Shown: positions 21,029 to 40,451, numbered from the stretch's first letter. The stretch: DNA of 64,000 bases from IMGVR_UViG_3300032675_000001:296684-360683, one strand, 5' to 3'. Program-made: numbers and translations. The notes: generated by a model not told the origin, from the letters alone.

Positions 21029-21654
21029 TTTTTACTCTTACAATTATGGCCATGCCAGCGAATATAGTTACTATTTCCTTTTCCGATTTTACCACAGTAC
21101 TCACATTCCCATTCCTGATTTTTATATTGTTTAGGTTGTTTACTTGCGGTGCAGTTCTGACCGTGCCAGCGTTTTAGATTAGCAATATCAGATTCTATAC
21201 CACAGTTAAAGCAAGTTGCTCTTTTTCGGTTAAGAGCAGCTTTTCTGTTTTTAGCTCTGGTCTCCAGTGATCTTTTCTTTCCCGTTTGTATTTCAGACAT
21301 TTTTTTGGCAATACGTGGGTTTCGCATTGGGTTTTTGTCTCCGAGAAGATCAGGGCGTGGCCCTCCCTTCAGAAAATGGTGACTCCCATCAGCTATACGC
21401 CGTAAAGCATGATTTTTACTCAGCAGAGATATCTCTCCCGGTGTTTTTCCCATTCTTAGTGCTAAAAGAATACATGCGGCCCAATCACCTTGGCGATGAT
21501 GTATGTCATAATGTTCCTGTATCGAAATACACATGAGATTGCTAATTTTGTTGTTTAATTTGTTTCCATCTATATGATGAATATCATATGATCTACCATC
21601 TTTATCTTTTGGTATTGGACCATAATAAGATTCCCATAACTTTCTGTAGTTCAT
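21025..21654 (-). CDS. HNH homing endonuclease
   Basis: DIHHIDGN..NN...NL......H...H; C-terminal C..CG...RWH..NC zinc repeats; ATGA-coupled to polymerase. Confidence 0.9.
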   Translation of the reverse strand: MNYRKLWESYYGPIPKDKDGRSYDIHHIDGNKLNNKISNLMCISIQEHYDIHHRQGDWAACILLALRMGKTPGEISLLSKNHALRRIADGSHHFLKGGPRPDLLGDKNPMRNPRIAKKMSEIQTGKKRSLETRAKNRKAALNRKRATCFNCGIESDIANLKRWHGQNCTASKQPKQYKNQEWECEYCGKIGKGNSNYIRWHGHNCKSKK

Positions 21655-22074: not shown

Positions 22075-22761
22075 TCAATCCATTTGATTAATTAGATTTT
22101 CAAGATCATTTAAAAGATTAATAGGTAAGGTTTCGGTGTATCCATCTGAACACTCATTCTTGGTAACTGCGCCATTGACATATCCAAAATGAGATTTGAT
22201 CTTAGATTCCCACTCAAGTCCCTTTTCTCCAGTATCAAAATCTTTTATATAATGTACAGTATATGCCCCATTCTTGGTCCGGTGACTGGCTAGTCTCCTT
22301 TTTAGATTAGTTGTCACCCCAAATTTAATAAAAGTATCAAATAGCAATACATAACCAGTTGATGGTTTAGTTGGATTAAATCCCTGTCCATTGCAGTTTG
22401 GGCATGGTGATTTTCTTTTTATACGATTTGGAACCACTGACCATGTATATCCACATGTAAGGTGGGTATGTGATATTTTTGAGTGTGTGCCATTATATTC
22501 TTCATTGACGATAAAATCTGGATTATTTAAACTCAACTGTTCTACATATTCATCATGTGTTAATTTTTGATTTCTAGCACACTTTGGACAGCCTCTTCCT
22601 ATTTTAATTTTTTCTGGTTTGGCCATCCACGTATGTCCACATCTGAGACTGGTGTATGATATTTTTGTAGTATTATTGATGTAGTTTTCGTTAACTATCA
22701 ATTCAGGTCTGTGTATACGTAAAAATTCTACGTATTCTTCATGTGTCATTTTTTTTCTCAT
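22075..22761 (-). CDS. putative homing endonuclease: 2 zinc-ribbon repeats + GIY-YIG-like domain
   Basis: CG.TW...C..C repeats; GY.L..IKFGVT....R...H...E; GYTET. Confidence 0.7.
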   Translation of the reverse strand: MRKKMTHEEYVEFLRIHRPELIVNENYINNTTKISYTSLRCGHTWMAKPEKIKIGRGCPKCARNQKLTHDEYVEQLSLNNPDFIVNEEYNGTHSKISHTHLTCGYTWSVVPNRIKRKSPCPNCNGQGFNPTKPSTGYVLLFDTFIKFGVTTNLKRRLASHRTKNGAYTVHYIKDFDTGEKGLEWESKIKSHFGYVNGAVTKNECSDGYTETLPINLLNDLENLINQMD

Positions 22762-22804: not shown

Positions 22805-23293
22805 TCAACATAGTTGTTCAAGTTCTTCAAGTAGGAAAAGGGGTAGTGTCTCGGTATATCCACAGGGGCACATCTCTTTGGAAACTGCACCTTGGGGATA
22901 TCCAAAATGATTTTTTATTCGTTTTTCCCACTCAATAGCATCTTTTCCGTTAGTGAATGTTTTTGTATAATGCACCGTGTGTTTTCCGTTCTTTGCTCGG
23001 TGATCTTTTAGTCTGTTCTTTAATATGTTAGTAATACCATATTTTAAGAATCCATCAAAAATCAGAATATAAACGGTTACTGGCTTAGTGGGATCAAACT
23101 TGCATATACGACACATGGGACAGCCTCTCCCAGATTTAATATTGGTTGGTCGCGCCAGCCATTCATGTCCACAAGTAAGGTGGGTGTGTGATATTTTTGT
23201 TGCGGCATTGATATATCTACCGTTAACTACAAACTCTGGTCTATGTGTGCGGAGATATGCTTCGTATTCTTCCTGAGTTACCGTTTTTGTCAT
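22805..23293 (-). CDS. putative homing endonuclease, paralogue of 22075-22761
   Basis: one H..C..C..C ribbon + KYGIT..R..H..E..GYTET; similar promoter. Confidence 0.7.
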   Translation of the reverse strand: MTKTVTQEEYEAYLRTHRPEFVVNGRYINAATKISHTHLTCGHEWLARPTNIKSGRGCPMCRICKFDPTKPVTVYILIFDGFLKYGITNILKNRLKDHRAKNGKHTVHYTKTFTNGKDAIEWEKRIKNHFGYPQGAVSKEMCPCGYTETLPLFLLEELEQLC

Positions 23294-24004: not shown

Positions 24005-24481
24005 TTAGAAGCGAACAGAAGTCGTAGCAACTACGCCGTTGTTCTTGACACCGCCAAGATCAGTATGAGCATACTGAACACCAACTGAGAATGGTCCTAC
24101 AACATTCAAATCAACGCCCCCAGTTGCACGAAGCCCCTGAAGATTGTGTGCATGAAGATCGCGTAGGTTATCATAACCAAGACCAGCATATACAAGAGTA
24201 TAACCAGTCACTTCATAACCAAGACGAGCGCCAACATTGACATCGCGACGATCAAACACGTTGTCAAGGCCAGTTTCCAAACCAGCAGTGATCGGACCAA
24301 CAACCTTGGTGTCGTAACCGAGTTCAACACCATAAGTGAAGTCACGATTTGACGGAATGTTTGAGATGTCCTGATAACCAACTTCACCAGTTACGCGAGG
24401 ACCAACAAAGCTATCTGCCATTGCTGGAGCGGCAGTTGCGGCGGATACAGCCAATAGTGCTGCTGTGATTAACTTCTTCAT
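24005..24481 (-). CDS. 8-stranded outer-membrane beta-barrel protein
   Basis: signal peptide A-x-A, alternating beta strands, C-terminal VRF (BAM signal). Confidence 0.85.
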   Translation of the reverse strand: MKKLITAALLAVSAATAAPAMADSFVGPRVTGEVGYQDISNIPSNRDFTYGVELGYDTKVVGPITAGLETGLDNVFDRRDVNVGARLGYEVTGYTLVYAGLGYDNLRDLHAHNLQGLRATGGVDLNVVGPFSVGVQYAHTDLGGVKNNGVVATTSVRF

Positions 24482-24573: not shown

Positions 24574-26631
24574 TTATTTTGATGTTGCCCTGTACACCCC
24601 ATCCCAATCTCTAGGTTTTGGTGGATTCTGTTGTATCTCTTTGATCCTATCTTGCATCATTAAGTAATAAGATTTCAGTACGCCGTTCCAGTTATTTTCC
24701 ATAGCCTGTGCAAAACCCAATGCTCTGTTCCAAGCACCCATTCTATATGCATCCATGAATCGTTGATGTGCTAGTTGCGCTTTTGCGTCCTTGTGCTCCA
24801 ACACCGTATAGATTCTGGAAGGTTCTGTTTTGCCCTTGACTGCGATAAGATCAAGTTCAACGACCTGATACTTGTCTTTCACGTATTCTGCGGTTTTGGG
24901 ACCAATAATGATTTTAACCCCGTAAGGCTTGCTTTGACCTTCCAGCCTACTTGCGAGATTAACGCCATCACCCAGACAAGTATAATCAAACCGCTGGTCG
25001 CTGCCCATATTGCCGACAACAACAGTATCAGTATTAATACCGAGACCCATTCCAAAAGCTGGTACGCCTTCTTTTTTGACTTCATTGTTAAATTCCTCCA
25101 ATGCTTTCAACATCTGAAACGCTGTTTTTACTGCATCCAATGCGTGTTTCTCATTGTTTACAGGTGCGTTCCAGAATGCCATTTGAGCATCACCTATATA
25201 CTTATCAAGCGTACCTTTGTTCTCAAGAATTGCTTTGGTCATCGCTGTCATGTAGCGATTCATAATCTTGGTCAATCCTTGAACGTCCTTGCCATAATGT
25301 TCTGAGATTGTAGTGAAACCACGAACATCCGTGAACATGATGGACAGTTCTTGCTCAGTGCCTCCTAGCTGTAATAGTTCTGGTTGACGCTGTAGTTGTG
25401 CAACAAGATCAGGACTCAAATAAGTTCCAAACTGCTTCTTGATCTGCTGCTTTTGTAGAAACTCATTGATGAATTTTACACTGTAAACATGCAAATAAAT
25501 AATGAGAGCAGACAAGAAGTTGAATGAAATATCAAACAATATCTTATTATGACTATATAGATATACAGGAGTATAAGCATATCCGATCAGTAATATTCCA
25601 ATCCAAACAATGGAATATCTTAGATTAGACAAGCCTATAACTGCTAGTGAAAGAAGCACAAATGCCAGAAGATCAACCAGCCCAACCCAATTCGGAATTG
25701 ACACAGAATCCTGATTTATCAGAGTCTGAAGAATGCTGGCCTGAACCTGATGGGGCATTTTGGCACCAGCCGGAGTCGCTACTGGGTTTGCGATCCCGCT
25801 CGCAGTCACACCGAGTAGAACGATCTTTCCATCGAGACGAGGAATATTCTCGCCTACTTCAAACGATGAGAATTCGGAATTCGGATTAATAAACACACGA
25901 CCATATTCATCTGTAGGAATTTTACCAAACTGTGGAACACGAACAGCCTCAACACCAGTCTCATTTATTTTCGCTTGATAGCTTGGATCACCAGCAGCGA
26001 CACGCAACAGTTCTAAGGCGAACGAAGGGTAGTATTCGCCATTTGAAGTCCCTAATAAAGGCATTCGGCGCACAACCCCATCCGTCTCGGGAAGAGTTGT
26101 TGTTATGCCGACACCTACAGCGGATTGTTGAAGAACTGGAATGTTATCAAGAACACAAGGATAGTTCGGAAGAAACTGAGTTGGTTTCCCGTCACCGATT
26201 ACAGCAACACCTGTGCGGCGAGTCTGACGATTATCCCTAGTGCAATCGGTTGAAAGTGTTTGGCTAAGCACTACAGGGTGATTTGCTAACGCATTTGCAA
26301 AGGCATCATCACCATTGAATCTATCTTTTTCCGGATAGAGAATGGTGCTTCCAACAAGACCAGCATGACCATTATCGTAAATGTCATTGATAATCTTGGC
26401 ATAAGTGTCTCTAGGGAATGGATATTGTCCGTATTTTTCTATTGCTTTCTCGCCAATATTTGCAATGACGATTTGATCAGAATGTACAGGCTTGCCTAGC
26501 ATAAGATAATCATAAAACTTAAGCTTCATCGCATCAACTAGATACGGATTGGAAAGCTTGACGATAAGAAGTAATGTTAAAGTGAAAAGAGCCATCCAAG
26601 GACTCAATAGGATTTTTCGTAGTTTTTTCAT
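24574..26631 (-). CDS. CHASE2-domain class III adenylate cyclase
   Basis: N-term TM; CHASE2 (G.YPFPR, DGVVRR.P); 3 TM; MFTDVRGFT, DKYIGDA, GDGVNLASRLE; Lys/Thr-type ATP specificity. Confidence 0.93.
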   Translation of the reverse strand: MKKLRKILLSPWMALFTLTLLLIVKLSNPYLVDAMKLKFYDYLMLGKPVHSDQIVIANIGEKAIEKYGQYPFPRDTYAKIINDIYDNGHAGLVGSTILYPEKDRFNGDDAFANALANHPVVLSQTLSTDCTRDNRQTRRTGVAVIGDGKPTQFLPNYPCVLDNIPVLQQSAVGVGITTTLPETDGVVRRMPLLGTSNGEYYPSFALELLRVAAGDPSYQAKINETGVEAVRVPQFGKIPTDEYGRVFINPNSEFSSFEVGENIPRLDGKIVLLGVTASGIANPVATPAGAKMPHQVQASILQTLINQDSVSIPNWVGLVDLLAFVLLSLAVIGLSNLRYSIVWIGILLIGYAYTPVYLYSHNKILFDISFNFLSALIIYLHVYSVKFINEFLQKQQIKKQFGTYLSPDLVAQLQRQPELLQLGGTEQELSIMFTDVRGFTTISEHYGKDVQGLTKIMNRYMTAMTKAILENKGTLDKYIGDAQMAFWNAPVNNEKHALDAVKTAFQMLKALEEFNNEVKKEGVPAFGMGLGINTDTVVVGNMGSDQRFDYTCLGDGVNLASRLEGQSKPYGVKIIIGPKTAEYVKDKYQVVELDLIAVKGKTEPSRIYTVLEHKDAKAQLAHQRFMDAYRMGAWNRALGFAQAMENNWNGVLKSYYLMMQDRIKEIQQNPPKPRDWDGVYRATSK

Positions 26632-26641
26632 GGCTCTATCC

Positions 26642-27835
26642 TTAATGTTTTACATATGAATATCCAGTGCAGGTTCCAGTAGTACAAGTAATGCTCATTG
26701 ATGCGCTATCAGTAGTAGTAGGATTATCCTGAACGACAGTTACTCCGATATTTGAACTATTTAGCGTAAGAGAAAACATTTTCTGTGCAGTGCCAGCTTG
26801 TGTGGCACTTACCGTATTTCCACTAGTTGGTATATTAAGTTCTAAGAAGTGATTGCCCGTTCCAGTCTGTGATGTGGTGATGTTATTACCTGTTCCTGTA
26901 ACGTTCTGAAATAGATTTTGTCCACCTGATTGAGTGTTGTTCAATATGTTTGAGTTGCCGTTAATGATAGCCTGCTCATAGTTGGAGTTTCCTGCCTGAT
27001 TTACTGTCATATTATTTCCAGTTCCAACAATATTAGCTTCAACTAGGTTATGATATCCATTCAATGTTTGACCACCTTGTGTCACGTTCAAGCTATTTGA
27101 TGCACCGTTAATAACCAATGCTGTGCCATTAGGACCTCTTACAGCATTGTAATCACCTGTTTGAGTAACAGTTACACTAGTGTTATCTCCACCGTATTGA
27201 TTGATGTAGACAGTGTTATAACCTATAGTTGAGGTTTGGTTTATATAGTTCTGCTCTATTGAACTGATAACAGCAGGAGGATAAGTGGGTGCAGGAGGTG
27301 CCGCAGATTGTCCTGCTGCTAATGGAGTAGTTGAGCCACTGCCTGCAAAAGTATTTGTTTGCGCAACAGTTGGGTTTAGAGTACCAGTAAAGCTGAATCC
27401 ATTTGAGTTAGGGAATCCATAGTCAGTGCTGAAGACTGTGCCATTTAGATTGGCATTGGTGAAGAAAAAGAAATGATGTCCTAGACTGTCTGTTCCCTCA
27501 ACATCCAGTTTACCCGGACCAAGATCAGCCGCAACGGAACCATTGCTATTATACACAATCATTTCCCAGGGATAGCTAGGATTGCCACTAGCGATAAATC
27601 CGATATATTGCGTTGACGATAAGTGATAAGGTGATCCTGTGTTCCAAGAAGTGCCTATGCCACTTAGGCTATAGATTTGACAAGTTGTGGTATACAAGCA
27701 AGCACTGACATTCCATTGCGTGTCACTGAACTGTGCAGCACCGAACTCCAGATTGGAAAAAGAGGTTGCCATAGCAGGAACAGTGAATAACCTTAAACAT
27801 AGAATGAAAAGTAGAATCTTATTAAAGGTTTTCAT
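26642..27835 (-). CDS. secreted protein with N-terminal globular domain and C-terminal curlin-like repeats
   Basis: signal peptide; Pro linker APPAPTYPP; repeated Q-x-G-x-x-N. Confidence 0.7.
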   Translation of the reverse strand: MKTFNKILLFILCLRLFTVPAMATSFSNLEFGAAQFSDTQWNVSACLYTTTCQIYSLSGIGTSWNTGSPYHLSSTQYIGFIASGNPSYPWEMIVYNSNGSVAADLGPGKLDVEGTDSLGHHFFFFTNANLNGTVFSTDYGFPNSNGFSFTGTLNPTVAQTNTFAGSGSTTPLAAGQSAAPPAPTYPPAVISSIEQNYINQTSTIGYNTVYINQYGGDNTSVTVTQTGDYNAVRGPNGTALVINGASNSLNVTQGGQTLNGYHNLVEANIVGTGNNMTVNQAGNSNYEQAIINGNSNILNNTQSGGQNLFQNVTGTGNNITTSQTGTGNHFLELNIPTSGNTVSATQAGTAQKMFSLTLNSSNIGVTVVQDNPTTTDSASMSITCTTGTCTGYSYVKH

Positions 27836-28974
27836 TTGTTAGGTGCTCCATTCTGGACTATTGTTATTGTTCCTTGTGGTCTACCATCACCTTGATTAGT
27901 CCATTTTTGATTCATAAAGTTGTATGAATCTACCAGTCCATTTTGAGAAACCACTACCTGTACTTGTGTATTTAGCGGTAACCAAACAGTAGCAGCCTGC
28001 TCTTTGTCTTGAGAAAGTTCTGAATAAGCCCATCCTATTTGAACAAGTTTCTTGTTCAATACAGGAGAAACATTGGTGTGTATTGTTTGTTTTGGAAGAG
28101 TTGCATTGTTTTCCAAATAAACCTGTTCCAATTGATCTGGAGTAGCGGGCTTGGCAGCAATCAATACTGCAACTTCTTCAAATGGATCACCACCTGAGTC
28201 TGGGTCTTGGTTTGCATCAGCAGCCGCCTGTGAAGGGTTCAACGAAAGCTTCAATGCGTTTTTTGATATCTTGTTAAGACTATCACCAGAATCGGTAGTG
28301 GGTGCTGAAATCTGTAGTGTATTGTTTACCTGCTTCATTGTCATATTTACTTTGACCGGAGGAGCAGGTGGAGTGAAACTGTTTTCCACCATAGTTGCTT
28401 GGAAAGGTCTGGACAGAGTTACTACTCCAGCAGCAGTTAGAACCTCAATAGACCCGGTTGGGCATTCATCTGTTATCTTTGTGGGGTCCTTGTCATCATA
28501 ACAGCTAGGTAGTAGAATGACAGTTGTTTTGCCAGTTTCATCAACTGACATCAAAAAGTCTGTGCCACGAACACCAATCGTTGCAGTTGGAGTATGTATA
28601 TTAACACCACCGGGATTGCCATGTGCGATTTTACCAGATGCATATCGCACTGTACCTAATGCAACTTTAAGACCAAGCTTGCCTTTGTTTGAGTTTCCAC
28701 CATCATATACGAAGTCATCTATTACAAGCTTACTGTTTTCGGTGATATTAACCGTAGTGCTATCAATAAACGTGATCTTGAACTTACCTTGACTGTTGGT
28801 GGTGATCGTATCCATCTTTTCAATCCCGCTACCTTTAGCAGCAGGATGTATCGTATTTGATCTTTTGATTTGACCTCCGCCTCTAAAATCTGTTACCGAC
28901 CCGATTGATGCCATCGCAGGGGTCGATAATAGAAGTAATAGATTAATGGCCAGTCTTAATATTGAACGTGCCAT
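27832..28974 (-). CDS. FecR-domain periplasmic protein
   Basis: signal peptide; D.I.T......I.F.D.T...I.ENS.L; TPTATIGVRGTDF. Confidence 0.85.
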   Translation of the reverse strand: MARSILRLAINLLLLLSTPAMASIGSVTDFRGGGQIKRSNTIHPAAKGSGIEKMDTITTNSQGKFKITFIDSTTVNITENSKLVIDDFVYDGGNSNKGKLGLKVALGTVRYASGKIAHGNPGGVNIHTPTATIGVRGTDFLMSVDETGKTTVILLPSCYDDKDPTKITDECPTGSIEVLTAAGVVTLSRPFQATMVENSFTPPAPPVKVNMTMKQVNNTLQISAPTTDSGDSLNKISKNALKLSLNPSQAAADANQDPDSGGDPFEEVAVLIAAKPATPDQLEQVYLENNATLPKQTIHTNVSPVLNKKLVQIGWAYSELSQDKEQAATVWLPLNTQVQVVVSQNGLVDSYNFMNQKWTNQGDGRPQGTITIVQNGAPNK

Positions 28975-29749
28975 TGTTACCGGTACTCGTTATGTTGATT
29001 ACTGTTTCAGAAGCACCATACTGTTGAGTAGTAAGAGTGTTACCTGTTCCAGTAAAGCTGGCATATAGAGAGTGACCATATGTTCCACCGGCATCAGTTT
29101 GTGTCACGTTAGTAGTATTGTTGCTACCAGTGAACAATAATGTTTGTGACGAGTTAGGCGAGTTATCAGTTACAGTAAATGCGTTATTGTTGCCATTGGT
29201 GTTGATTGTTTGCGTAATATTTGCAGCAGACCCATGAAAATTCAATGAGTTGTTGTTACCATCAAATACAACATTAAGATTCAACTTATTACAGTTTGAA
29301 TCGCCCTGCTGTGTGCCACATGCAATGACAGCAGTATTATTATTACCAATCTGTTGAATAGTAGCAGTTGCGCCACTACCTGTTCCAGTAGAACCTACAA
29401 TACCCATTAGTAATGAGTTTGAATTGCCAGTTTGAATAACTGTAACAGTTTGATTGTCACCAGAAAGATAAATTGGATTTACCAAAGTACCTGTAATGTT
29501 AGATACACCTGTTTGTTGGATATTTACATTTACGTTATTACCTGACTGATCAATGTATACTTTATTTGTTGTTGCTACTGTGCCTGCTTCTGTTGCATTG
29601 GGTGAAGTTGCTACGATTGCAGGAGGATTTGGTGCAGTAGGAAGTACCGCAGTTGCTGGAGTGCCAGCATCAACTGATGCTGTTTGTGCAAACGCAGCAC
29701 TAGATACTAGCAACGAACCAAGAATTAATGCATATTTTATTATTTTCAT
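28943..29749 (-). CDS. curlin-like (CsgA/CsgB-type) repeat protein
   Basis: signal peptide; many ~22-aa N/Q/G/T-rich repeats (I.Q.G..N). Confidence 0.75.
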   Translation of the reverse strand: MKIIKYALILGSLLVSSAAFAQTASVDAGTPATAVLPTAPNPPAIVATSPNATEAGTVATTNKVYIDQSGNNVNVNIQQTGVSNITGTLVNPIYLSGDNQTVTVIQTGNSNSLLMGIVGSTGTGSGATATIQQIGNNNTAVIACGTQQGDSNCNKLNLNVVFDGNNNSLNFHGSAANITQTINTNGNNNAFTVTDNSPNSSQTLLFTGSNNTTNVTQTDAGGTYGHSLYASFTGTGNTLTTQQYGASETVINITSTGNNGTFNIKTGH

Positions 29750-29760
29750 CTTTGTAATCC

Positions 29761-30588
29761 TTACTTTGTTGTAGTTGTTTGTGCGGTTGCCTTAAAGTGC
29801 CAAAGCCCTTTCTTTTCGCCGCTCTTTATTAGTTCTGCTACACCGAGTTCAATGGCTGCTCTTATAGCATAACTTCCAGCTTCATTAGTCGTTTGTTGTC
29901 CATCAAGTTCAAATGCCTGTGTTCCCAAATCAAAGAGTTTAAACACTGTTATACCCTCTGAGGTAGACAAAACATTTTTATTGACAGTGACACTATCTAA
30001 TACTTCGCCGGTTTGTGTAGATACGAGTCGCATATTGATTACGACCATATCTTCACTGTATTGAGTATTCGGACCTATGCCTAGATAACGAACCCCATTA
30101 CCTCCTGTTTTAGTATCACTGTTATAATCAATGATACCACCTTCAATGATCAAGCCCGCTACCGTTAAAGGTGGCAGCGGTGTTGCTTTATCACCATATT
30201 CTTGTTCACGCATCTGACGAATAAGTTGACGTTCCTTTATGAGACTGTCAATACCCACACGTTCAACTGGTCTAAACCATTTGCCATTGTCAACATCTGA
30301 TAGAGTTTTAATAAGATATGCGTCAGCACCCTGAGTTACTGCGGTACTGAACGTGCTTAGAGTTGATGATGGCTTACGCTGTCCAGTCTTGTCAGTAAAT
30401 GCATATACTGCAACTGGAATCGGTGGACCTTCAGGATCAGGGATGCCCTTGAATACCTTTTCATTGGCAAACTTAGACACTACAGGCTTTGATCTAAGCA
30501 TTTCCGTGTCTTTGTTCAGTCTAGGGTGAATGCCTCCGATACAACCGGACAAAAGAAGCATTAATGGCAAAATCAATAGTTTTTTCAT
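29761..30588 (-). CDS. csgG: curli secretion channel CsgG
   Basis: lipobox LSGC; VAVY.F.DKTGQRKP; STAVTQGA; WF..VER.G...L.KERQ.IR; EGGII.Y. Confidence 0.95.
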   Translation of the reverse strand: MKKLLILPLMLLLSGCIGGIHPRLNKDTEMLRSKPVVSKFANEKVFKGIPDPEGPPIPVAVYAFTDKTGQRKPSSTLSTFSTAVTQGADAYLIKTLSDVDNGKWFRPVERVGIDSLIKERQLIRQMREQEYGDKATPLPPLTVAGLIIEGGIIDYNSDTKTGGNGVRYLGIGPNTQYSEDMVVINMRLVSTQTGEVLDSVTVNKNVLSTSEGITVFKLFDLGTQAFELDGQQTTNEAGSYAIRAAIELGVAELIKSGEKKGLWHFKATAQTTTTK

Positions 30589-30599
30589 GTCAAGGCTCC

Positions 30600-31055
30600 T
30601 TAAAACGCAAATGTCGCAATAGGAACATTGACCACTGTTTGATTGCCTGAACTGTCAACTACCGTGAGTTGCACATTGGTGCCTGTTTTTAGGTAACTAA
30701 TGGTGTTTCCATCTAGATTAAATGTTCCTGCGTTGGATGATCCTCCGGCTTGGAACAAGTTGTTTGACAACTGTGTTGCAAGCTGTGCATACACTTGTGA
30801 AGTAAACAGAGAAATAAACTTAGCTAGAGGAGTGTTTGATGCAGCAGCGGCGGCGGCTGCTTGAGCAGATGCTAATGCATTTGCATTTGAGGCAGCATTA
30901 GAAGACTCTAACGACTGCACCGAAAGTACATGGTTAGACCAGTTGATGCCATTAAATGAAGGGTCTTTAAACTGCTGAATCAGTGGATCAGCATGTGCCG
31001 TTCCTGCAATACTAAGTGCTGTGATTAGAGAAAGTGCTTTTAATATTTTTCTCAT
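30600..31055 (-). CDS. csgF: curli assembly component CsgF
   Basis: signal peptide then L..QFKDPSFNG (CsgF F.NP.FGG N-terminal motif); adjacent to csgG. Confidence 0.85.
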   Translation of the reverse strand: MRKILKALSLITALSIAGTAHADPLIQQFKDPSFNGINWSNHVLSVQSLESSNAASNANALASAQAAAAAAASNTPLAKFISLFTSQVYAQLATQLSNNLFQAGGSSNAGTFNLDGNTISYLKTGTNVQLTVVDSSGNQTVVNVPIATFAF

Positions 31056-31072
31056 TATTTCTCTCCAAATAT

Positions 31073-31402
31073 TTAACTACTTCCGCCAGAAGCCTCTTGA
31101 TCTGCTTCTTTGTGATGTACACGAGGTTGATTGATAATCTTTTCGGCCTCAACACGCTCATGTTCAATGGTCTTTCCGCGCAAGTGTAATACCGTATTAA
31201 CTTTTTGATTAAGTCTGATCAAGTCATTGTCTAGCATTCTGATACGATCAATCAGCGCGATCAGAACAGTGTTTGCTTCGCTGAGAACCGGCTTGACTTC
31301 TTTTGTCGCCCATTCCCAAACGTAGAACACGAAATATCCCATGCCGCCAGCAGCAATGATGGGGAATCCATACTTGTTTACTAGTTCTGCTATTTCACCC
31401 AT
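31073..31402 (-). CDS. small single-TM/coiled-coil protein
   Basis: YGFPIIAAGGMGYFVF..IALIDRIRMLDNDLIRL; paralogue of next gene. Confidence 0.8.
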   Translation of the reverse strand: MGEIAELVNKYGFPIIAAGGMGYFVFYVWEWATKEVKPVLSEANTVLIALIDRIRMLDNDLIRLNQKVNTVLHLRGKTIEHERVEAEKIINQPRVHHKEADQEASGGSS

Positions 31403-31686
31403 CAGTCGCGTCTCGCATCTGTCTTGCCATCAGCACGAGCGATTCGTTCAACATCTGGTCTTAAACCCAACGCATTTGAAACAACAGTGTCAATGCGAAT
31501 GACATCGTGATTCATAGTCTTAACACGATTGTCTAGTGCGGTGATGATACCAGCCATACCTTTTACGCTACCCGTGACACCAGCAAGAATAAACTTTAGG
31601 GTGAGGAACACAAAGTAACCAGCCCCTAATGCAGCCGCAATAGGAAATCCAACATCACCAATAACTTTAAAGATATCTGTACCCAT
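31402..31686 (-). CDS. small single-TM/coiled-coil protein
   Basis: VGFPIAAALGAGYFVF..TALDNRVKTMNHDVIRI; TGATG coupling. Confidence 0.8.
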   Translation of the reverse strand: MGTDIFKVIGDVGFPIAAALGAGYFVFLTLKFILAGVTGSVKGMAGIITALDNRVKTMNHDVIRIDTVVSNALGLRPDVERIARADGKTDARRD

Positions 31687-31699
31687 AAACCCTCATAAC

Positions 31700-31746
31700 A
31701 GTAAAACCCCAGTGTTTTGTTTACACTGAGGTGTTACTATTATTTA
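31700..31746 (-). promoter_or_regulatory. late promoter and leader hairpin of curli/cyclase operon
   Basis: TAAATA 31741-31746; 16-bp stem 31700-31738 with G-U pair valid only on minus strand. Confidence 0.6.
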
Positions 31747-32133: not shown

Positions 32134-33582
32134 TTATTTTTGAAAAAGTGAAAATAAATTCCCAGTGACATAGTTCTTATCTTGTCCAAACATACTATGT
32201 TGTAAATGCTTGATAATATCTGGGGTAAGGTGTCTTGCTCTCATTCCCCCACGAGGAAAAAGATGCACTTCTACTGGTTCATCGCCTTCAACCTTTTGAA
32301 TAGCCATCATGCGATTGCGCCCTTCATGACCACTGACTCTGGCATCTTTACTGAAGTCACCGTCTTCCCATTCTCGTGGAATATCTATGGTCAAAAAGGG
32401 TGAACCCAATGCTCCACCTTGTTCAATATGACCTGCAATGTGATCAACGCTTGTGGGATTGTTTAATCTGTGAGCAAGCTTTAAAAACATACTCGGTTTC
32501 ATCAAAACACGCAATCCCATGTAATCCACGTTAGCATTATATGGAACAGAACCAAGCCCGTTTTCGTTGTCTACTTTGTATTCATCAAGTTCTGATTCTT
32601 TTATGTCTTTTGGCATTGCATAAAAGATATGCTTACCTACAGCGGCAAGTTTTTTAGTTCCTTTTGCCCAATATGGATGAATATCTTTGGTGTGATAAAA
32701 GACTGCACCGTGTGTTGGGTCAGGAGCATGACCAGACATGATCTTCTTGGCAAGCTCATAGCTCTTGGCCCATAGCTTGTAATCAAGACCTTTGCCAGTG
32801 TTTTCAAGCTTCTTTAACCATGTATTGAAATCTTGACCACCGGGTGCTTTTCTGGACTTGATGATCTTATCAAGATGTTCCATTTCTTGTGCATATTTGT
32901 AGTTTGGATCGTTGTGGTTCCAGCAACTAAACTGACTTGGTTTTGTGGCAACACCAACAATACCTTGACCAAAACGTCTTGCGTGTGCCTTATCATTGGC
33001 GCGATTCTTAATGACATTACCGATTGCTAGCATACCATTTGCGCCTTGATCCCTTGCTTCTCCCCACATTGTGTGGGCAAGAATCTTAGTGGGGTCTTGG
33101 TGTACTGGTTGTGTTGCTGCTGGGAGATCAAAACGAACAACAGGATCAAACTGCTGCTGTTTATTGTGCATAGCCAATCCGCCTGCCGCCAAAGCCGCTG
33201 CGCCGCCTGCGGCTAGTGCACCCTTCTTAGCCCAATCGGGAAAAGCTTCATCAAGCGATTCATTCATACCTAAAGGAAGATTGGCAACATGCTGCAATGG
33301 AAGATTGACTAGTTTCAATGCACCACTCGCAAACTGTCTCCAGTAACCGGTATTATGAATATGCTGCATCATGTAATACAGATATCTTGCATCAAGAACA
33401 TCAGTAGCCGTTACCTTGATACCGATATTTTCTGGTGAATATTCCTTGGTTGGTGTGCCTACCGATTTGTCACTACCTTTGCGCTGAAGCCAGAAATCAG
33501 CATCAGGAAAGTTTGTCTTCACTGTTGCTAAATCTTTGAGCCTTACGCCAGCGGATTCTGTTATGAACTCTTTCGCTCTCAT
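32134..33582 (-). CDS. multidomain late protein: HsdS/TRD-like + SleB-type cell-wall hydrolase (Hydrolase_2) + ParB-like
   Basis: start MRAKEFITE; LAHTMWGEAR..G..GM.A...VI.NR, QFSCWN, DPT.GA.FYH, G.H.FY; C-term GHEGRNR. Confidence 0.75.
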   Translation of the reverse strand: MRAKEFITESAGVRLKDLATVKTNFPDADFWLQRKGSDKSVGTPTKEYSPENIGIKVTATDVLDARYLYYMMQHIHNTGYWRQFASGALKLVNLPLQHVANLPLGMNESLDEAFPDWAKKGALAAGGAAALAAGGLAMHNKQQQFDPVVRFDLPAATQPVHQDPTKILAHTMWGEARDQGANGMLAIGNVIKNRANDKAHARRFGQGIVGVATKPSQFSCWNHNDPNYKYAQEMEHLDKIIKSRKAPGGQDFNTWLKKLENTGKGLDYKLWAKSYELAKKIMSGHAPDPTHGAVFYHTKDIHPYWAKGTKKLAAVGKHIFYAMPKDIKESELDEYKVDNENGLGSVPYNANVDYMGLRVLMKPSMFLKLAHRLNNPTSVDHIAGHIEQGGALGSPFLTIDIPREWEDGDFSKDARVSGHEGRNRMMAIQKVEGDEPVEVHLFPRGGMRARHLTPDIIKHLQHSMFGQDKNYVTGNLFSLFQK

Positions 33583-35816
33583 TATCCAATCCGCTCTGCT
33601 CGTATATGTCGAGAATTCCAAGTTGGGTTTTCTCGTCTAGCGATATTTATTGCTTCTTCCGCACTTGAAGCAGTCACATTGGATATACCACTGGCGTCTC
33701 CTCTATGGACTCTCCATAACGCTGGTGCTGTTTCTGTATTTTCAGATGATGAAGTATTACCATTTTCTGCTTCTTCCCAGCGAGCATTAAATCGCATGAT
33801 CCAATTAATCTGAGCATCAGTTAGGTTTTCATAGTCTTGATCATGTGGGTCAACGTGAGGAAGACCTTGTTGATCGCACCATAGTTCATATTCACGAGTT
33901 AGTTGATCAATAGCTTGCGCTCTTGGTCCATCCTGTTGAGGAGCATATGCATTGACATCATCTGAAGGAGTAGGAGGTGTTTGGCGGCGACCGGGTTCGG
34001 CAACGTCAACAGAAATATTCTGTAGTGGCATAGTTCTCCACACGTGATTGCGAGCCGCCAGCCTATTATATGCCACTTCTGAATTGGGACCAGATGCGTA
34101 TGCAGGAGCAACTGAACCATCACGTGTCATAAATCTATATGTTGTTTCACCCTCGGCAGGCTCATCAAGAATGCCCTGTGGATCATTTTCACCAGATAGT
34201 ATCTTAGCTAGTTCATCGTTCGTTTTACGATTGTACTTCTTCTTTGCAAGAGCACCGGCAAGTTCTTCCTTATTAAGTTCACCGGCCATATATCTAGCAA
34301 ATAAACTCATTTCTGCCTTAGGGTCTTTTGGTTTAAGTAACTTATATAATCCCTTTAAGTATTCTTTACGATACTTCTGTGGATCACAAGCTGCATCAAG
34401 TGCTACGACAAATCTCAACACAGTATTTTCAATCTTACTAAAGTTAGAGTTTAACCAATCATTACCGGGACCACGAAACTCAACCCAGTTTTCTTTAGTA
34501 TTAATACTGGTGAACTTTCTGGTTGACCCATTATGAATAATCTTACTTGCTATTTCTTCCATATTACTGCGTAATTTTTCAAATAATCTTTCTGTTTCCT
34601 GTGGATTATCTTTTGCTTTATTTTTAATAATATCAAGTGCAGACTCACAGTAAGAGTTAGCTATACGACCAAACTGGTTAAGAACATACTGATCTCCGGA
34701 AAGAATAGCAAGCTTTACATAATCCAAGTTACTTTTACTATAGTTAGGAACACTTACGTTCATGTGTAAACCGCATGAACTATTAGTGTATGCACCAACG
34801 TCATCTGCCCATTCTTTAATCTTGGAGATATCATCAAACATTTCATCTACTGGCAGTGGAGGACTAATAAACTCTAATCCTGCCTCATCTGAACCATATG
34901 CTCTTAAACTAGAATCTGGTTCAATAGTATACCCATCAGATGTTCTGCGAGCACCGTGATATGATGAACTCCAGTTTACGCTGCGCCCGATGGCGTCTTC
35001 AAATCTGCTAGCGACTTCTTCAATGGATTCGCCGCCATTGTTGTTATATACTGGTTCAGGATCACTCCAGCGGGTCCATGCTAAATCATTATTACGGTTC
35101 ATTCGGTGATTATATACGTCATCCATATCATTGATACCGATGCTCTCTAGGAACTCTTCTTGATCAACCTCATCACGATCAAATCCGTATATGTATGGGC
35201 TATTTTCATCTGGGTCGGCTTCATCGTCTTCATCATAACTATAATAGTTTGGAATCATGTCGCCGTCTTTAAATGACTCGTATGCTTGATCGTAATAGTT
35301 GTAGCCAGCAGCATTGCCGGGTCTTTTCCATTCCTCATCGGCTACTTCTTCGTAATCTTCTTTAGTGGGAATACGATCACCCAATAGGTCTTCTGGTTTA
35401 TCTAGATAATCAGCAATATCTGATGGATCAGCATTTTTCTTAATCCAGTTTAAAAGATATTCCTTGCCTCTTTTTTCCCAATCTTTTTTGACATATGTTT
35501 CTAAATATTCATCAAACTTTTCTTCTAATACCCGTCTTAATTCGGCAATAGTGGATCGGGTATTGTGATCACGTTCATCAAAGAAATCAACAATGTCATC
35601 AATGCTTCTAGCAGGCTCATTTTCATCGTAACGTTCTGGGTCTTGGTAGTCTGGTTCATCATCCTCGGTGTTAACGTCAGGAACGATCATTTCAAACTCC
35701 ATACCAACCTTAGCATCAATCTGATTAGCCAGTTTTTTAAGGTTAGTAGGACTCATCTCCACTTCAAGGAGTTGTTGTTGTGCTTCGTATAGGTCAAGGA
35801 AATGTTTTGCTCTCAT
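33582..35816 (-). CDS. amidoligase (COOH-NH2 ligase family) protein
   Basis: VGMEFEM, EPDSSL, LEFISPP, CGLH.NVS, KF.SIN, VEFR. Confidence 0.8.
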   Translation of the reverse strand: MRAKHFLDLYEAQQQLLEVEMSPTNLKKLANQIDAKVGMEFEMIVPDVNTEDDEPDYQDPERYDENEPARSIDDIVDFFDERDHNTRSTIAELRRVLEEKFDEYLETYVKKDWEKRGKEYLLNWIKKNADPSDIADYLDKPEDLLGDRIPTKEDYEEVADEEWKRPGNAAGYNYYDQAYESFKDGDMIPNYYSYDEDDEADPDENSPYIYGFDRDEVDQEEFLESIGINDMDDVYNHRMNRNNDLAWTRWSDPEPVYNNNGGESIEEVASRFEDAIGRSVNWSSSYHGARRTSDGYTIEPDSSLRAYGSDEAGLEFISPPLPVDEMFDDISKIKEWADDVGAYTNSSCGLHMNVSVPNYSKSNLDYVKLAILSGDQYVLNQFGRIANSYCESALDIIKNKAKDNPQETERLFEKLRSNMEEIASKIIHNGSTRKFTSINTKENWVEFRGPGNDWLNSNFSKIENTVLRFVVALDAACDPQKYRKEYLKGLYKLLKPKDPKAEMSLFARYMAGELNKEELAGALAKKKYNRKTNDELAKILSGENDPQGILDEPAEGETTYRFMTRDGSVAPAYASGPNSEVAYNRLAARNHVWRTMPLQNISVDVAEPGRRQTPPTPSDDVNAYAPQQDGPRAQAIDQLTREYELWCDQQGLPHVDPHDQDYENLTDAQINWIMRFNARWEEAENGNTSSSENTETAPALWRVHRGDASGISNVTASSAEEAINIARRENPTWNSRHIRAERIG

Positions 35817-35843
35817 TGAGGTATTTATCAAACTTTAGGATTG

Positions 35844-38438: not shown

Positions 38439-38882
38439 TTATGCTCGCGAAGTTTTAAGAATTGAACGCAACATCCAGTTATGCTTACCATGAGCATCAA
38501 TGCGTTCTGCAATGAAGTTTGCAATACCTTGCTCATCCGCGTCTTCTGCAAGATGAAATGCTTCTTTCCACATTGCAAGTAATCTCTGATTATCTTCGTA
38601 GAGTTCTTGCATCATCAACTCTGCACGAGGAATCTTTATTTGGTCCTGTATCTGGCTTAACTCAGAAAAACGAACAAGGCTACCTGGAGCATATGAATCA
38701 AGTTGACGAATCATTTCGGCAGTACGATCAATAGAGTTATCATACACTTCTGAATATAGTTCATCAAGAAACTTGTGATATTGAGGGAAATCAGCGCCTT
38801 CAATATTCCAATGAAAGTTTTGCGTTTTGATTGAAAACGCATAAGATGTTGCTAATAGTGTTTTCAGTGCGTCAGCGAGCAT
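38439..38882 (-). CDS. dps: Dps/ferritin-like protein
   Basis: NFHWNIEG.DF..YH..L.E.Y.E....D..AE; WMLRS. Confidence 0.9.
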   Translation of the reverse strand: MLADALKTLLATSYAFSIKTQNFHWNIEGADFPQYHKFLDELYSEVYDNSIDRTAEMIRQLDSYAPGSLVRFSELSQIQDQIKIPRAELMMQELYEDNQRLLAMWKEAFHLAEDADEQGIANFIAERIDAHGKHNWMLRSILKTSRA

Positions 38883-40447: not shown

Positions 40448-40451
40448 GTGA

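What the first reader, a model, noticed from the sequence alone, without database searches (positions are those of the whole stretch)
24574..31746. Phage late operon fusing curli (type VIII) secretion to a FecR / CHASE2 adenylate cyclase trans-envelope signalling chain
Seen: eight contiguous co-oriented genes behind one TAAATA promoter: two small paralogous TM proteins, CsgF, CsgG, a curlin-repeat protein, a FecR protein, a second curlin-repeat protein with an extra domain, and a CHASE2-3TM-class III cyclase with intact catalytic Asp/Asn/Arg and ATP-specifying Lys. No CsgE or CsgD is visible. Known: CsgG/CsgF export curlin; FecR domains relay outer-membrane signals inward; CHASE2 cyclases with FecR-like partners are envelope sensors in Alphaproteobacteria; csgF/csgG have been reported in some marine myophages. 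Inference: this is an outside-in sensor (pore + curlin 'antenna' -> FecR -> CHASE2 -> cAMP), not a biofilm module. It could let the infected cell detect superinfecting phage or envelope contact and tune lysis timing or host CRP-family regulons.
Basis: partly seen in the sequence, partly recalled or inferred. Interest (0 to 1): 0.9.

Follow-up and report, generated by a model that had tools for sequence, protein, structure and literature searches.

The report
Phage curli cluster with cAMP cyclase
A probable giant phage carries the already published "viral curli" gene cluster (an outer-membrane fibre-export pore, fibre subunits, a FecR-like periplasmic protein and a membrane adenylate cyclase); the genes are real and tightly conserved, but the idea that they form a pure outside-in sensor is only partly supported.

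Summary
Eight co-oriented minus-strand genes (24574-31686) encode two small paralogous membrane proteins, CsgF, lipoprotein CsgG, a curlin-repeat protein, a secreted FecR-domain protein, a second curlin with an N-terminal domain, and a CHASE2 class IIIb adenylate cyclase with intact catalytic residues. There are two TAAATA late-promoter-like motifs, not one. The cluster is not new. The same order is annotated in Pelagibacter phage HTVC008M and Methylophilales phage Melnitz, and Wittmers et al. 2022 described it with FecR and the cyclase. I found it conserved in 48 of 48 adequately flanked IMG/VR loci for FecR and 44 of 48 for the cyclase. New here: the window appears to come from a ~360-kb jumbo T4-related phage. 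The small proteins are not histidine kinases. About half of the cyclase's cellular relatives have type I secretion genes nearby and ~30 a giant-adhesin-like gene; in those checked, the adhesin N-terminus is a FecR domain. The phage FecR domain resembles the periplasmic retention plug of such adhesins. Best reading: a late-expressed curli fibre system whose periplasmic side is read by FecR and CHASE2 into cAMP. Sensing of superinfection and control of lysis timing remain untested.

The parts
31741..31746 (-). TAAATA late-promoter-like motif upstream of the first small gene
   Evidence: TAAATA occurs 38 times on the minus strand against 12 on the plus strand, often just before start codons. It lies within 80 nt upstream of sm1 homologues in 46 of 59 viral loci, against a 3.7% background.
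31706..31732 (-). Hairpin plus U-run between that motif and the first start codon
   Evidence: 10-bp stem, 5 GC pairs. Relatives L007 and L008 keep a hairpin of different sequence at the same place. Its role is unknown.
31402..31686 (-). sm1: 94-aa bitopic membrane protein (GFPI motif, one hydrophobic helix, then a charged helix)
   Evidence: phrog_18771 at 3e-33. No Pfam family. Hydrophobic segment 12-34. Family alignment.
31073..31402 (-). sm2: 109-aa paralogue of sm1
   Evidence: phrog_18771 at 9e-33; 29% identical to sm1. Among 50,697 phage records it is found only in Melnitz and HTVC008M.
31070..31075 (-). Second TAAATA motif, about 14 nt before the csgF start codon (inside the end of sm2)
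   Evidence: TAAATA lies within 80 nt upstream of csgF in 37 of 81 loci.
30600..31055 (-). CsgF (151 aa, signal peptide ending AHA/D)
   Evidence: Pfam CsgF 7e-17; phrog_35372.
29761..30588 (-). CsgG outer-membrane lipoprotein channel (275 aa, lipobox LLSGC)
   Evidence: Pfam CsgG 1e-50. 39% identical to E. coli CsgG over the full length.
28943..29749 (-). cur1: secreted curlin-repeat protein (268 aa), the likely major fibre subunit
   Evidence: NCBIfam CsgA 2e-4. Conserved Q-x-G-x-x-N repeats, a Pro-rich N-terminal segment and a Cys pair in 23 homologues. Present in 48 of 48 loci.
27832..28974 (-). Secreted FecR-domain protein (380 aa): signal peptide, FecR beta-domain 25-210, disordered acidic linker, small C-terminal beta-domain 300-375
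   Evidence: Pfam FecR 1.6e-12. AlphaFold model with pLDDT 78.7. Foldseek matches to the anti-sigma periplasmic domains 4m0h and 6ovk, and to 5ix9. Present in 48 of 48 loci.
26642..27835 (-). cur2: secreted protein (397 aa) with an N-terminal beta-sandwich, a disordered linker 169-199 and C-terminal curlin-like repeats ending in a Cys pair
   Evidence: NCBIfam CsgB 1e-3. hhalign against E. coli CsgB gives 64% probability. Model. Its start overlaps the FecR stop by 4 nt here and in 55 of 62 loci. It is variable: absent in L008, and 155 aa (N-domain only) in L007.
24574..26631 (-). CHASE2 / class IIIb adenylate cyclase (685 aa) with a conserved C-terminal extension
   Evidence: Pfam CHASE2 3.6e-38 and Guanylate_cyc 1.1e-21. 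Aligns with CyaB 3r5g. Catalytic motifs and hydrophobic segments. phrog_35576 at 1e-229.
24005..24481 (-). Possible ninth gene: 158-aa outer-membrane beta-barrel with a signal peptide
   Evidence: Pfam OMP_b-brl 2.4e-11. It lies 92 nt after the cyclase with no TAAATA between them. It is not conserved next to the module in relatives, so membership is doubtful.

Best explanation
This is the 'viral type VIII secretion (curli) cluster' known from SAR11 and OM43 phages, here on what looks like a ~360-kb jumbo T4-related phage. It has two layers. Layer 1 is the invariant core: CsgG, CsgF, a major curlin-repeat subunit, a secreted FecR-like protein and two small inner-membrane proteins. These are made late in infection and exported by the host Sec system. 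They build a CsgE-less, alphaproteobacterial-style curli pore that puts amyloid-type fibres on the infected cell. Layer 2 is a frequent add-on: a second curlin with a globular N-domain, translationally coupled to FecR, and a CHASE2 adenylate cyclase. The FecR-like domain is the same kind of domain that forms the periplasmic retention plug of giant type I-secreted adhesins. Cellular relatives of the cyclase often sit beside such adhesins and their secretion genes. I therefore infer that the phage FecR protein sits at the periplasmic face of the CsgG pore or on the N-domain of cur2. There it would report the state of fibre export or anchorage to the CHASE2 domain, which would release the cyclase to make cAMP in the infected cell. 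Shown: gene content, order, homology, export signals, intact catalytic residues, conservation, late-promoter motifs, cellular synteny and the fold resemblance. Inferred: fibre formation, all protein contacts, the nature of the signal, and what cAMP does.
For: Identity of the parts. Same eight-gene order annotated in HTVC008M and Melnitz. Conserved order in IMG/VR loci: FecR 48/48, cur1 48/48, cur2 43/48, cyclase 44/48. FecR and cur2 overlap by 4 nt in 55 of 62 loci. TAAATA motifs are enriched before sm1 (46/59) and csgF (37/81), against a 3.7% background and zero before csgG, fecR and cur2. The published description covers expression in metatranscriptomes and optional loss of the cyclase in podophages (PMC9599517). 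Of 71 cellular loci with the nearest cyclase homologues (29-37% identity), 29 have a FecR-like gene, 36 a T1SS ABC transporter, 34 a HlyD-type protein and about 30 a large protein with tblastn similarity to the Afipia/Tardiphaga adhesins; none has CsgG or CsgF. Pfam places FecR near the N-terminus of cadherin/Big_9/RTX adhesins next to the cyclase (L093, L125) and in FecR proteins of 242-866 aa beside it (L133, L143, L144, L146, L157). It also finds a secretin two genes from the cyclase in L137. The phage FecR model matches 5ix9 with TM 0.75, rmsd 1.0 A and 27% identity. The profile aligns 5ix9 residues 14-87 to FecR positions 20-91. 5ix9 is the MpIBP anchoring domain used as the template for the LapA retention module (10.1101/198937). 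CHASE2 is inhibitory in S. meliloti CyaD1 (PMC5498481), and an outer-membrane protein plus CHASE2 cyclases signal inward there (PMC7529298).
Against: No experiment shows fibres, cAMP synthesis or any protein contact for a phage cluster. The Melnitz authors saw no clumping (PMC9004378). Homology of cur1 and cur2 to characterised curlins is weak: hhalign of cur1 against CsgA matched only the signal peptide, and the cur2 model has no PDB match. The 5ix9 sequence match is borderline (E 0.07) and covers only half of the FecR domain. [quoted passage not shown] In the cyclase tree the viral clade is separate from all cellular sequences, so no adhesin-linked donor lineage is shown. No cAMP receptor was identified in the window, and the host is unknown.
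Confidence: 0.45

Rival explanations
1. Published reading (Zaragoza-Solas 2020; Wittmers 2022). The cluster is simply a fibre or aggregation device ('sibling capture', a shield against superinfection). FecR and the cyclase act as regulators that control expression of the secretion system through cAMP, as cAMP-CRP does for csgD in E. coli.
For: The complete T8SS core plus curlins is conserved. Curli cause aggregation in model bacteria (established knowledge). The cyclase is optional.
Against: The cyclase is the last gene of the same late transcription unit, so it cannot switch that unit on. No CsgD or other cAMP-responsive regulator is in the cluster. FecR here has a signal peptide and no anti-sigma or transmembrane part, so it cannot regulate transcription directly. 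No clumping was seen with Melnitz.
Confidence: 0.25
2. The cluster is a dedicated outside-in sensor: curlin antenna, then CsgG/CsgF, then FecR, then CHASE2, then cAMP. It detects superinfecting phage or envelope contact and tunes lysis timing; fibre production as such is irrelevant.
For: The topology allows only inward signalling. cur2 has a fold-linker-repeat layout that could span the pore. There is an S. meliloti precedent for an outer-membrane protein plus CHASE2 cyclase sensing an external protein. The adhesin retention-module analogy also fits.
Against: The core persists without the cyclase in some myophage loci and many podophages, so sensing through cAMP cannot be the primary function. 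There is no evidence for any link to lysis genes or superinfection. A major curlin of 8-9 repeats is conserved in every locus, which fits a bulk fibre better than an antenna.
Confidence: 0.12
3. Buchholz 2022 reading. CsgG, with or without CsgF, is repurposed as a gated pore (secretin- or pinholin-like) that times lysis.
For: The cluster has a late-promoter context. A SleB-type cell-wall hydrolase lies two genes upstream in the window and its close relatives. The proposal is in PMC9004378.
Against: CsgG is an outer-membrane lipoprotein (lipobox), so it cannot depolarise the inner membrane. That paper overlooked the curlin, FecR and cyclase genes, which this idea leaves unexplained (no occurrence of 'cyclase' or 'FecR' in its text).
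Confidence: 0.05
4. An ungated CsgG pore (no CsgE) serves to import nutrients or cofactors. FecR hints at iron-siderophore uptake, and the cyclase reports supply.
For: CsgE is absent. The idea is raised in PMC7029224 and PMC9599517.
Against: FecR here lacks every part of the iron-signalling FecR apart from the beta-domain. No TonB-dependent transporter or ECF sigma factor was seen in the module or among the flanking ORFs scanned. Curlin genes would be superfluous. Alphaproteobacterial curli systems are reported to lack CsgE as a rule (my recollection of Dueholm 2012, cited; not re-read here).
Confidence: 0.05

Closest known systems
Viral T8SS/curli cluster of pelagiphages (HTVC008M gp011-gp019; Melnitz genes 97-104; HTVC023P-type podophages; Wittmers et al. 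2022, PMC9599517)
   Same: Same gene families in the same order: two small proteins, CsgF, CsgG, curlin, FecR, a second curlin, CHASE2 cyclase. Proteins are 38-46% identical (CsgG, FecR, cyclase). All viral cyclases form one clade with SH-aLRT 100.
   Different: The phage backbone differs. The DNA polymerase is nearest to 349-490-kb jumbo phages and the identical locus lies on a 360,683-bp contig, whereas the known carriers have 141-147-kb myophage genomes or are podophages. An outer-membrane beta-barrel gene follows the cyclase here. The host is unknown. The published label 'histidine kinase' for the small proteins is not borne out.
Bacterial curli systems (E. coli csgBAC/csgDEFG; CsgE-less alphaproteobacterial type)
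   Same: A CsgG lipoprotein channel 39% identical to the E. coli protein, a CsgF family member, and secreted Q/N/G-rich repeat subunits.
   Different: No CsgE, CsgC or CsgD. The curlins are long (8-9 repeats) and only weakly similar to CsgA and CsgB. FecR, the cyclase and the small membrane proteins are not part of bacterial curli operons (PMC9599517). None of 71 cellular cyclase loci had CsgG.
FecR-domain protein plus CHASE2 sensor pairs in bacteria (S. meliloti SMc02177/CyaD1; Burkholderia 'BiofilmReg' LysM-FecR plus CHASE2 histidine kinase; P. aeruginosa PA4035-type)
   Same: A secreted FecR-domain protein is encoded next to a CHASE2 membrane sensor. In 29 of 71 cellular relatives of this cyclase a FecR-like gene lies within about 8 kb. 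In S. meliloti the output is cAMP.
   Different: Cellular FecR partners share only the FecR domain; the phage C-terminal domain is never matched. The cellular pairs are not linked to CsgG. The phage protein has no LysM domain.
LapA/MpIBP-type giant adhesins held in their type I secretion pore by an N-terminal retention module (PDB 5ix9)
   Same: The N-terminal half of the phage FecR domain superposes on 5ix9 (TM 0.75, rmsd 1.0 A). The layout 'folded periplasmic domain - disordered linker - extracellular repeats' recurs in cur2 and partly in the FecR protein. Two cellular relatives of the cyclase checked with Pfam (L093, L125) sit beside adhesins with a FecR domain near the N-terminus.
   Different: The secretion route differs (Sec plus CsgG, not ABC/HlyD/TolC). 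No LapG/LapD-type control was seen; no c-di-GMP component was found in the module proteins. In the phage the plug-like domain is a separate protein, not fused to the fibre.

Membership tests
Type VIII secretion (curli) system | CsgG outer-membrane lipoprotein channel | tested here: met
   Pfam CsgG 1e-50. 39% identity to E. coli CsgG, with the lipobox LLSGC.
Type VIII secretion (curli) system | CsgF accessory protein | tested here: met
   Pfam CsgF 7e-17 over the full model. Pairwise BLAST against E. coli CsgF is not significant.
Type VIII secretion (curli) system | Secreted curlin-repeat subunits (CsgA/CsgB type) | tested here: inconclusive
   The hits are weak and fall below the curated cut-offs. 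A regular Q-x-G-x-x-N repeat, signal peptides and a beta-solenoid-like strand pattern are present.
Type VIII secretion (curli) system | Periplasmic adaptor CsgE, chaperone CsgC/H and regulator CsgD | tested here: not met
   tblastn of the E. coli proteins against the window finds nothing below E = 1. This was tested at BLAST sensitivity only.
Type VIII secretion (curli) system | Formation of extracellular amyloid fibres | not testable with these tools
   Needs Congo red, ThT or TEM after expression.
Viral T8SS cluster of pelagiphages | Homologous genes in the conserved order small proteins-CsgF-CsgG-curlin-FecR-(curlin)-(cyclase) | tested here: met
   and the description in PMC9599517.
Viral T8SS cluster of pelagiphages | Carried by a SAR11/OM43-type myophage or podophage | tested here: not met
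   The DNA polymerase is nearest to jumbo phages and the contig is 360.7 kb. The host is not determinable here.
FecR-type anti-sigma factor (cell-surface signalling) | Periplasmic FecR beta-domain | tested here: met
   Pfam 1.6e-12. Foldseek matches to 4m0h and PupR 6ovk.
FecR-type anti-sigma factor (cell-surface signalling) | N-terminal cytoplasmic anti-sigma domain plus a transmembrane helix, with a partner ECF sigma factor and TonB-dependent transducer | tested here: not met
   The protein starts with a cleavable signal peptide directly followed by the FecR domain. No sigma factor or TonB-dependent receptor was found in the module or among the flanking ORFs scanned. It should not be filed as an anti-sigma factor.
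CHASE2 receptor class III adenylate cyclase | TM1 - periplasmic CHASE2 - membrane block - cyclase homology domain | tested here: met
   Pfam. Hydrophobic segments at 6-24 and 316-388.
CHASE2 receptor class III adenylate cyclase | Two metal Asp, adenine-specifying Lys with Thr (class IIIb), and transition-state Asn and Arg | tested here: met
   D435, D481, K477, T551, N558, R562, aligned with CyaB 3r5g and largely invariant in 10 viral homologues.
CHASE2 receptor class III adenylate cyclase | cAMP synthesis regulated through CHASE2 | not testable with these tools
   Needs cya complementation or an enzyme assay.
Histidine kinase (published label for the small proteins) | HisKA/DHp and HATPase_c domains | tested here: not met
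   No Pfam hit even at E = 10. The profile against the PDB gives only coiled-coil noise. The 150 best of 862 family representatives are all 67-209 aa.
Pycsar-type defence cyclase | Pyrimidine cyclase paired with a cNMP-activated effector | tested here: not met
   The PADLOC PycC hits (3.6e-24) reflect the shared class III fold. The Lys/Thr pair and the closest solved relatives are adenylate cyclases. There is no effector gene in the cluster.

The most novel reading that the evidence does not exclude
FecR-like domains may be a general periplasmic 'plug and reporter' for surface fibres that are threaded through an outer-membrane pore, whether a type I adhesin, a secretin substrate or curli. CHASE2 sensors would read the state of that plug. 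Phages would then have captured such a fibre-status-to-cyclic-nucleotide pathway and wired it to a curli pore. An infected cell could convert contact, pulling or loss of its phage-made fibres (aggregation, attachment, or debris from lysed neighbours, as with the S. meliloti NsrA/CyaK signal) into cAMP, and so adjust the end of the infection cycle.
Probability: 0.15. Interest if true: 0.8.

Novelty: new member of a known kind. Interest (0 to 1): 0.45.

Why it matters
Viral curli clusters are among the most widespread unexplained accessory modules of marine phages; they were found at all 65 GOV2.0 stations and make up about 0.1% of assembled viral proteins (PMC9599517). Their function is unknown and the literature holds three incompatible ideas. 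This window adds a third kind of carrier, a probable jumbo phage. It removes a misleading label (histidine kinase). It also gives a concrete, testable link: the FecR protein looks like the periplasmic retention plug of secreted adhesins, and many cellular relatives of the cyclase are encoded near adhesin secretion systems. If that link holds, it would also give a first handle on what CHASE2 domains sense, which is a long-standing open question in bacterial signalling.

Tried and rejected
1. DNA-level search of the module against phage genomes found only a 75-bp match to HTVC008M, so protein searches were needed.

2. The search for homologous proteins with FecR was saturated by close viral relatives. 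All 120 listed hits were at least 59% identical (4,679 hits in total), and it gave no cellular context.

3. hhalign of the cur1 family against E. coli CsgA aligned only the signal peptide. Curlin membership therefore rests on the repeat pattern and context, not on homology scores.

4. Foldseek of the cur2 model found no significant PDB match, only low-probability beta-helix proteins. The N-domain remains unassigned.

5. The single-sequence PDB search with FecR found nothing; only the profile and the fold search did.

6. I rejected the 'virion fibre' idea for the curlins because both carry Sec signal peptides and conserved Cys pairs.

7. I rejected 'Pycsar cyclase' for the reasons given in the membership table.

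8. I considered the outer-membrane beta-barrel at 24005-24481 as an NsrA-like partner. It is not conserved beside the module, so I left it as doubtful.

9. A look-up of one atypically long small-protein relative returned only an 874-bp contig.

10. Rfam and tRNA scans of the window found nothing.

12. The cyclase tree does not nest the viral clade inside the adhesin-linked Nitrobacteraceae clade, so I do not claim a donor lineage.

Full report
OBSERVATION. The region 24574-31686 holds eight contiguous or overlapping ORFs on the minus strand.

Pfam identifies CsgF (7e-17), CsgG (1e-50), a FecR domain (1.6e-12, residues 55-153 of a 380-aa protein), and CHASE2 (3.6e-38) plus the class III cyclase domain (1.1e-21) in a 685-aa protein. 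The two small leading proteins (94 and 109 aa) have no Pfam family, but both match phrog_18771. They are 29% identical paralogues with an invariant GFP motif, one hydrophobic helix and a conserved charged helix.

The two curlin-like proteins give only weak hits: NCBIfam CsgA 2e-4 and CsgB 1e-3, and Pfam Curlin_rpt 0.077. An alignment of 23 homologues of the first one shows a regular Q-x-G-x-x-N repeat, a conserved proline-rich N-terminal segment and a conserved Cys pair.

CsgF, CsgG (lipobox LLSGC), both curlins and the FecR protein begin with signal peptides. The cyclase has one N-terminal hydrophobic segment and a hydrophobic block at 316-388. Its catalytic set is complete (D435, K477, D481, T551, N558, R562) and aligns with the solved class IIIb cyclase CyaB of P. 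aeruginosa. E. coli CsgE, CsgD and CsgC find nothing in the window.

Two details differ from the finding. First, there are two TAAATA motifs, one at 31746 before the first small gene and one at 31075 directly before csgF. Second, a ninth co-oriented gene, a 158-aa outer-membrane beta-barrel, follows the cyclase.

IS TAAATA A PROMOTER? The hexamer occurs 38 times on the coding strand against 12 on the other, typically 10-60 nt before start codons. Across related viral loci it lies within 80 nt upstream of the first small gene in 46 of 59 cases and upstream of csgF in 37 of 81. It is never found upstream of csgG, fecR or the second curlin. The background is 3.7% per 80-nt window. This fits a T4-type late promoter core (established knowledge for T4-like phages), so late expression is a reasonable inference but is not shown.

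ALREADY KNOWN. Protein searches of the phage collection find the cyclase and CsgG together only in Pelagibacter phage HTVC008M and the four Methylophilales Melnitz phages. Their GenBank annotation shows the same eight genes in the same order.

- Zaragoza-Solas et al. 2020 reported the CsgF/CsgG cluster in pelagimyophages (PMC7029224).
- Buchholz et al. 2022 proposed a lysis-timing pore for Melnitz without mentioning the cyclase or FecR (PMC9004378).
- Wittmers et al. 2022 described the whole cluster in podo- and myo-pelagiphages: 'histidine kinase', CsgF, CsgG, CsgA/B, FecR, a second CsgA/B and the adenylate cyclase. They showed that it is ubiquitous in ocean viromes and expressed, and noted that FecR and the cyclase are not part of bacterial curli operons (PMC9599517).

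The finding is therefore a rediscovery.

LINKAGE. A scan of IMG/VR with CsgG returned 124 relatives, of which 80 loci were kept. Among the 48 loci with at least 8.5 kb downstream of csgG, all 48 have CsgF, the first curlin and FecR. Forty-three have the second curlin and 44 have the cyclase. The second curlin starts 4 nt before the FecR stop in 55 of 62 loci, which suggests translational coupling.

The small proteins are present in 41 of 45 loci. They lie either at the head of the cluster or, in one clade, on the opposite strand just beyond the cyclase. Among 50,697 phage records they occur only in the phages that have the cluster, so they belong to it. The second curlin is plastic: it is absent in L008, reduced to its N-domain in L007, and up to 684 aa elsewhere.

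WHAT KIND OF PHAGE. The window's DNA polymerase is most similar (42-46%) to those of 349-490-kb jumbo phages, namely Sinorhizobium Phosso, Agrobacterium Atu_ph07, Vibrio 2.275.O, Xanthomonas XaC1 and Yersinia fHe-Yen9-04. A locus identical in all eleven module and flanking proteins tested lies on a 360,683-bp IMG/VR contig. None of those cultured jumbo phages has the cluster.

In a tree of 117 cyclases, all 47 viral sequences form one clade with SH-aLRT 100, apart from the 70 cellular ones. This clade includes the window, HTVC008M, Melnitz and phage contigs mis-binned in MAGs. The simplest reading is a single capture followed by transfer between phage lineages, now reaching a probable jumbo phage.

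CELLULAR RELATIVES. A scan of one genome per bacterial species with the viral cyclase alignment gave 71 bona fide cellular loci (29-37% identity over the full length), mostly Alphaproteobacteria such as Afipia, Tardiphaga and Bradyrhizobium. None has CsgG, CsgF or the small proteins.

By tblastn, 29 have a FecR-like gene nearby, 36 a type I secretion ABC transporter, 34 a HlyD-type adaptor, about 30 a large protein with similarity to the Afipia/Tardiphaga adhesins, and 2 a secretin. Pfam confirms the following:

- The operon 'giant cadherin/Big_9/RTX adhesin - ABC - HlyD - CHASE2 cyclase' in Afipia.
- A FecR domain near the N-terminus of such adhesins (L093, L125).
- FecR proteins of 242-866 aa beside the cyclase (L133, L143, L144, L146, L157).
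- A FecR gene plus a secretin (L137), and a FecR gene plus an OmpA-family gene (L160).

Only the FecR domain of the phage protein is ever matched, never its C-terminal domain. FecR plus CHASE2 is thus a cellular cassette that often sits near secretion systems for surface proteins; pairing it with a curli pore is the phage-specific step.

STRUCTURE. The AlphaFold model of the FecR protein (pLDDT 78.7) has a beta-rich domain at 25-210, a partly disordered acidic linker, and a small beta-domain at 300-375. Foldseek matches the periplasmic domains of anti-sigma factors (4m0h, PupR 6ovk). It also matches 5ix9 with TM 0.75 and rmsd 1.0 A over 62 columns. A profile search aligns 5ix9 residues 14-87 with FecR positions 20-91 at a borderline E of 0.07.

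5ix9 is the N-terminal anchoring domain of the Marinomonas ice-binding adhesin. It is the template for the LapA 'retention module', a periplasmic plug that keeps a type I-secreted adhesin threaded in its outer-membrane pore (10.1101/198937). The second curlin (pLDDT 70.9) has an N-terminal beta-sandwich, a disordered linker at 169-199 and a beta-solenoid-like repeat region, with no PDB match.

THE 'HISTIDINE KINASE'. The small proteins have no kinase domain by Pfam even at E = 10. A family profile finds only coiled-coil noise in the PDB. The 150 best of 862 family representatives among 1.84 billion proteins are all 67-209 aa. They are module-specific bitopic membrane proteins of unknown role, and charge distribution mildly favours a cytoplasmic C-terminus (my inference).

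MECHANISM. I commit to a two-layer reading.

Layer 1 is a self-contained, CsgE-less curli system that decorates the infected cell with fibres late in infection. FecR and the small proteins are integral parts of it, because they persist where the cyclase is lost.

Layer 2 is the cyclase, usually with the second curlin. It converts a periplasmic state of that system into cAMP, read through the FecR-like plug-type domain by CHASE2. Two S. meliloti results support the direction and logic:

- Deleting CHASE2 makes CyaD1 constitutive.
- An outer-membrane protein plus CHASE2 cyclases transduce an external protein signal into cAMP.

Every physical contact, the signal itself and the target of cAMP are inferences. 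I put the confidence at 0.45.

The published 'aggregation plus regulators' idea (0.25) does not explain how the last gene of a late operon could regulate that operon. The lysis-pore and import-pore ideas (0.05 each) leave most of the genes unexplained.

VERDICT. The cluster is a new member, on a new kind of phage backbone, of a known and published viral module. Its function remains an open and testable question.

Noticed in passing
window 24005-24481 (-): A 158-aa outer-membrane beta-barrel protein with a signal peptide (Pfam OMP_b-brl 2.4e-11) lies 92 nt after the cyclase. It recalls the NsrA outer-membrane partner of S. meliloti CHASE2 cyclases, but it is not conserved beside the module in relatives.
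   Followed up: partly
window 31706-31746 (-); L007 and L008 at the same position: The TAAATA motif before the first small gene is followed by a hairpin plus U-run inside the presumed 5' leader. Two relatives keep a hairpin of different sequence there, which suggests a conserved RNA structure (attenuator or stabiliser).
   Followed up: partly
window 18275-21028 (-) and IMG/VR contig IMGVR_UViG_3300032675_000001: The DNA polymerase is nearest to 349-490-kb jumbo phages (42-46% identity), and an identical locus sits on a 360,683-bp contig. The window is probably from a jumbo T4-related phage.
   Followed up: partly
window 21025-21654, 22075-22761, 22805-23293 (-): Three HNH/homing-endonuclease-like ORFs lie in a row between the DNA polymerase and the module. 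The last two both hit phrog_681.
   Followed up: no
window 32134-33621 (-): A 495-aa protein with a SleB-type cell-wall hydrolase domain (Hydrolase_2, 5.7e-18) lies two genes upstream of the module. It is also upstream in the close relatives L005 and L008. It could be the endolysin or a local peptidoglycan remodeller.
   Followed up: no
window 33582-35831, 38439-38882, 38906-40531, 15290-16360, 47119-49386 (-): Auxiliary genes are present: an amidoligase-domain protein, a ferritin/Dps-like protein, a tandem gamma-glutamyl cyclotransferase protein, an IMPDH/GMP-reductase-like protein and a Lon-like ATP-dependent protease (phrog_4871, 6e-234).
   Followed up: no
window 50226-51218 (-): A 330-aa protein has its residues 188-276 matching a PHROG annotated as holin (phrog_3427, 9e-9). 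It is a possible lysis gene, 19 kb from the module.
   Followed up: no
L087 116-11106 (Afipia broomeae), L093 153-10133 (Tardiphaga robiniae): These cellular loci carry the operon 'about 1,500-aa cadherin/Big_9/RTX adhesin - ABC - HlyD - CHASE2 adenylate cyclase', followed in L087 by a metallo-beta-lactamase-fold gene. The adhesin carries a FecR domain in Tardiphaga (L093); Pfam found none in the Afipia one (L087). I found no paper combining CHASE2, adenylate cyclase and adhesin.
   Followed up: partly
L137 10695-13978; L138: A FecR-domain gene and a GspD-type secretin lie next to a CHASE2 cyclase. This is a second kind of outer-membrane pore linked to the same sensor pair.
   Followed up: partly
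L083-L086, L099, L124, L126, L134, L139: Contigs carrying the viral cluster are binned into MAGs labelled Bacteroidetes, Legionellales, Rhodobacteraceae, Synechococcus and Pirellulales. These are likely phage contigs mis-binned into genomes, which is a trap for host assignment.
   Followed up: no
L027-L045 (IMG samples 33000423xx-33000425xx): A large group of relatives (67-68% CsgG identity) comes from a block of IMG samples numbered 33000423xx-33000425xx. The Lake Mendota Tardiphaga MAGs (L092, L147) come from nearby sample numbers, so these relatives may be freshwater, although pelagimyophages of freshwater SAR11 were reported to lack the cluster (PMC7029224). The habitat was not verified.
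   Followed up: no
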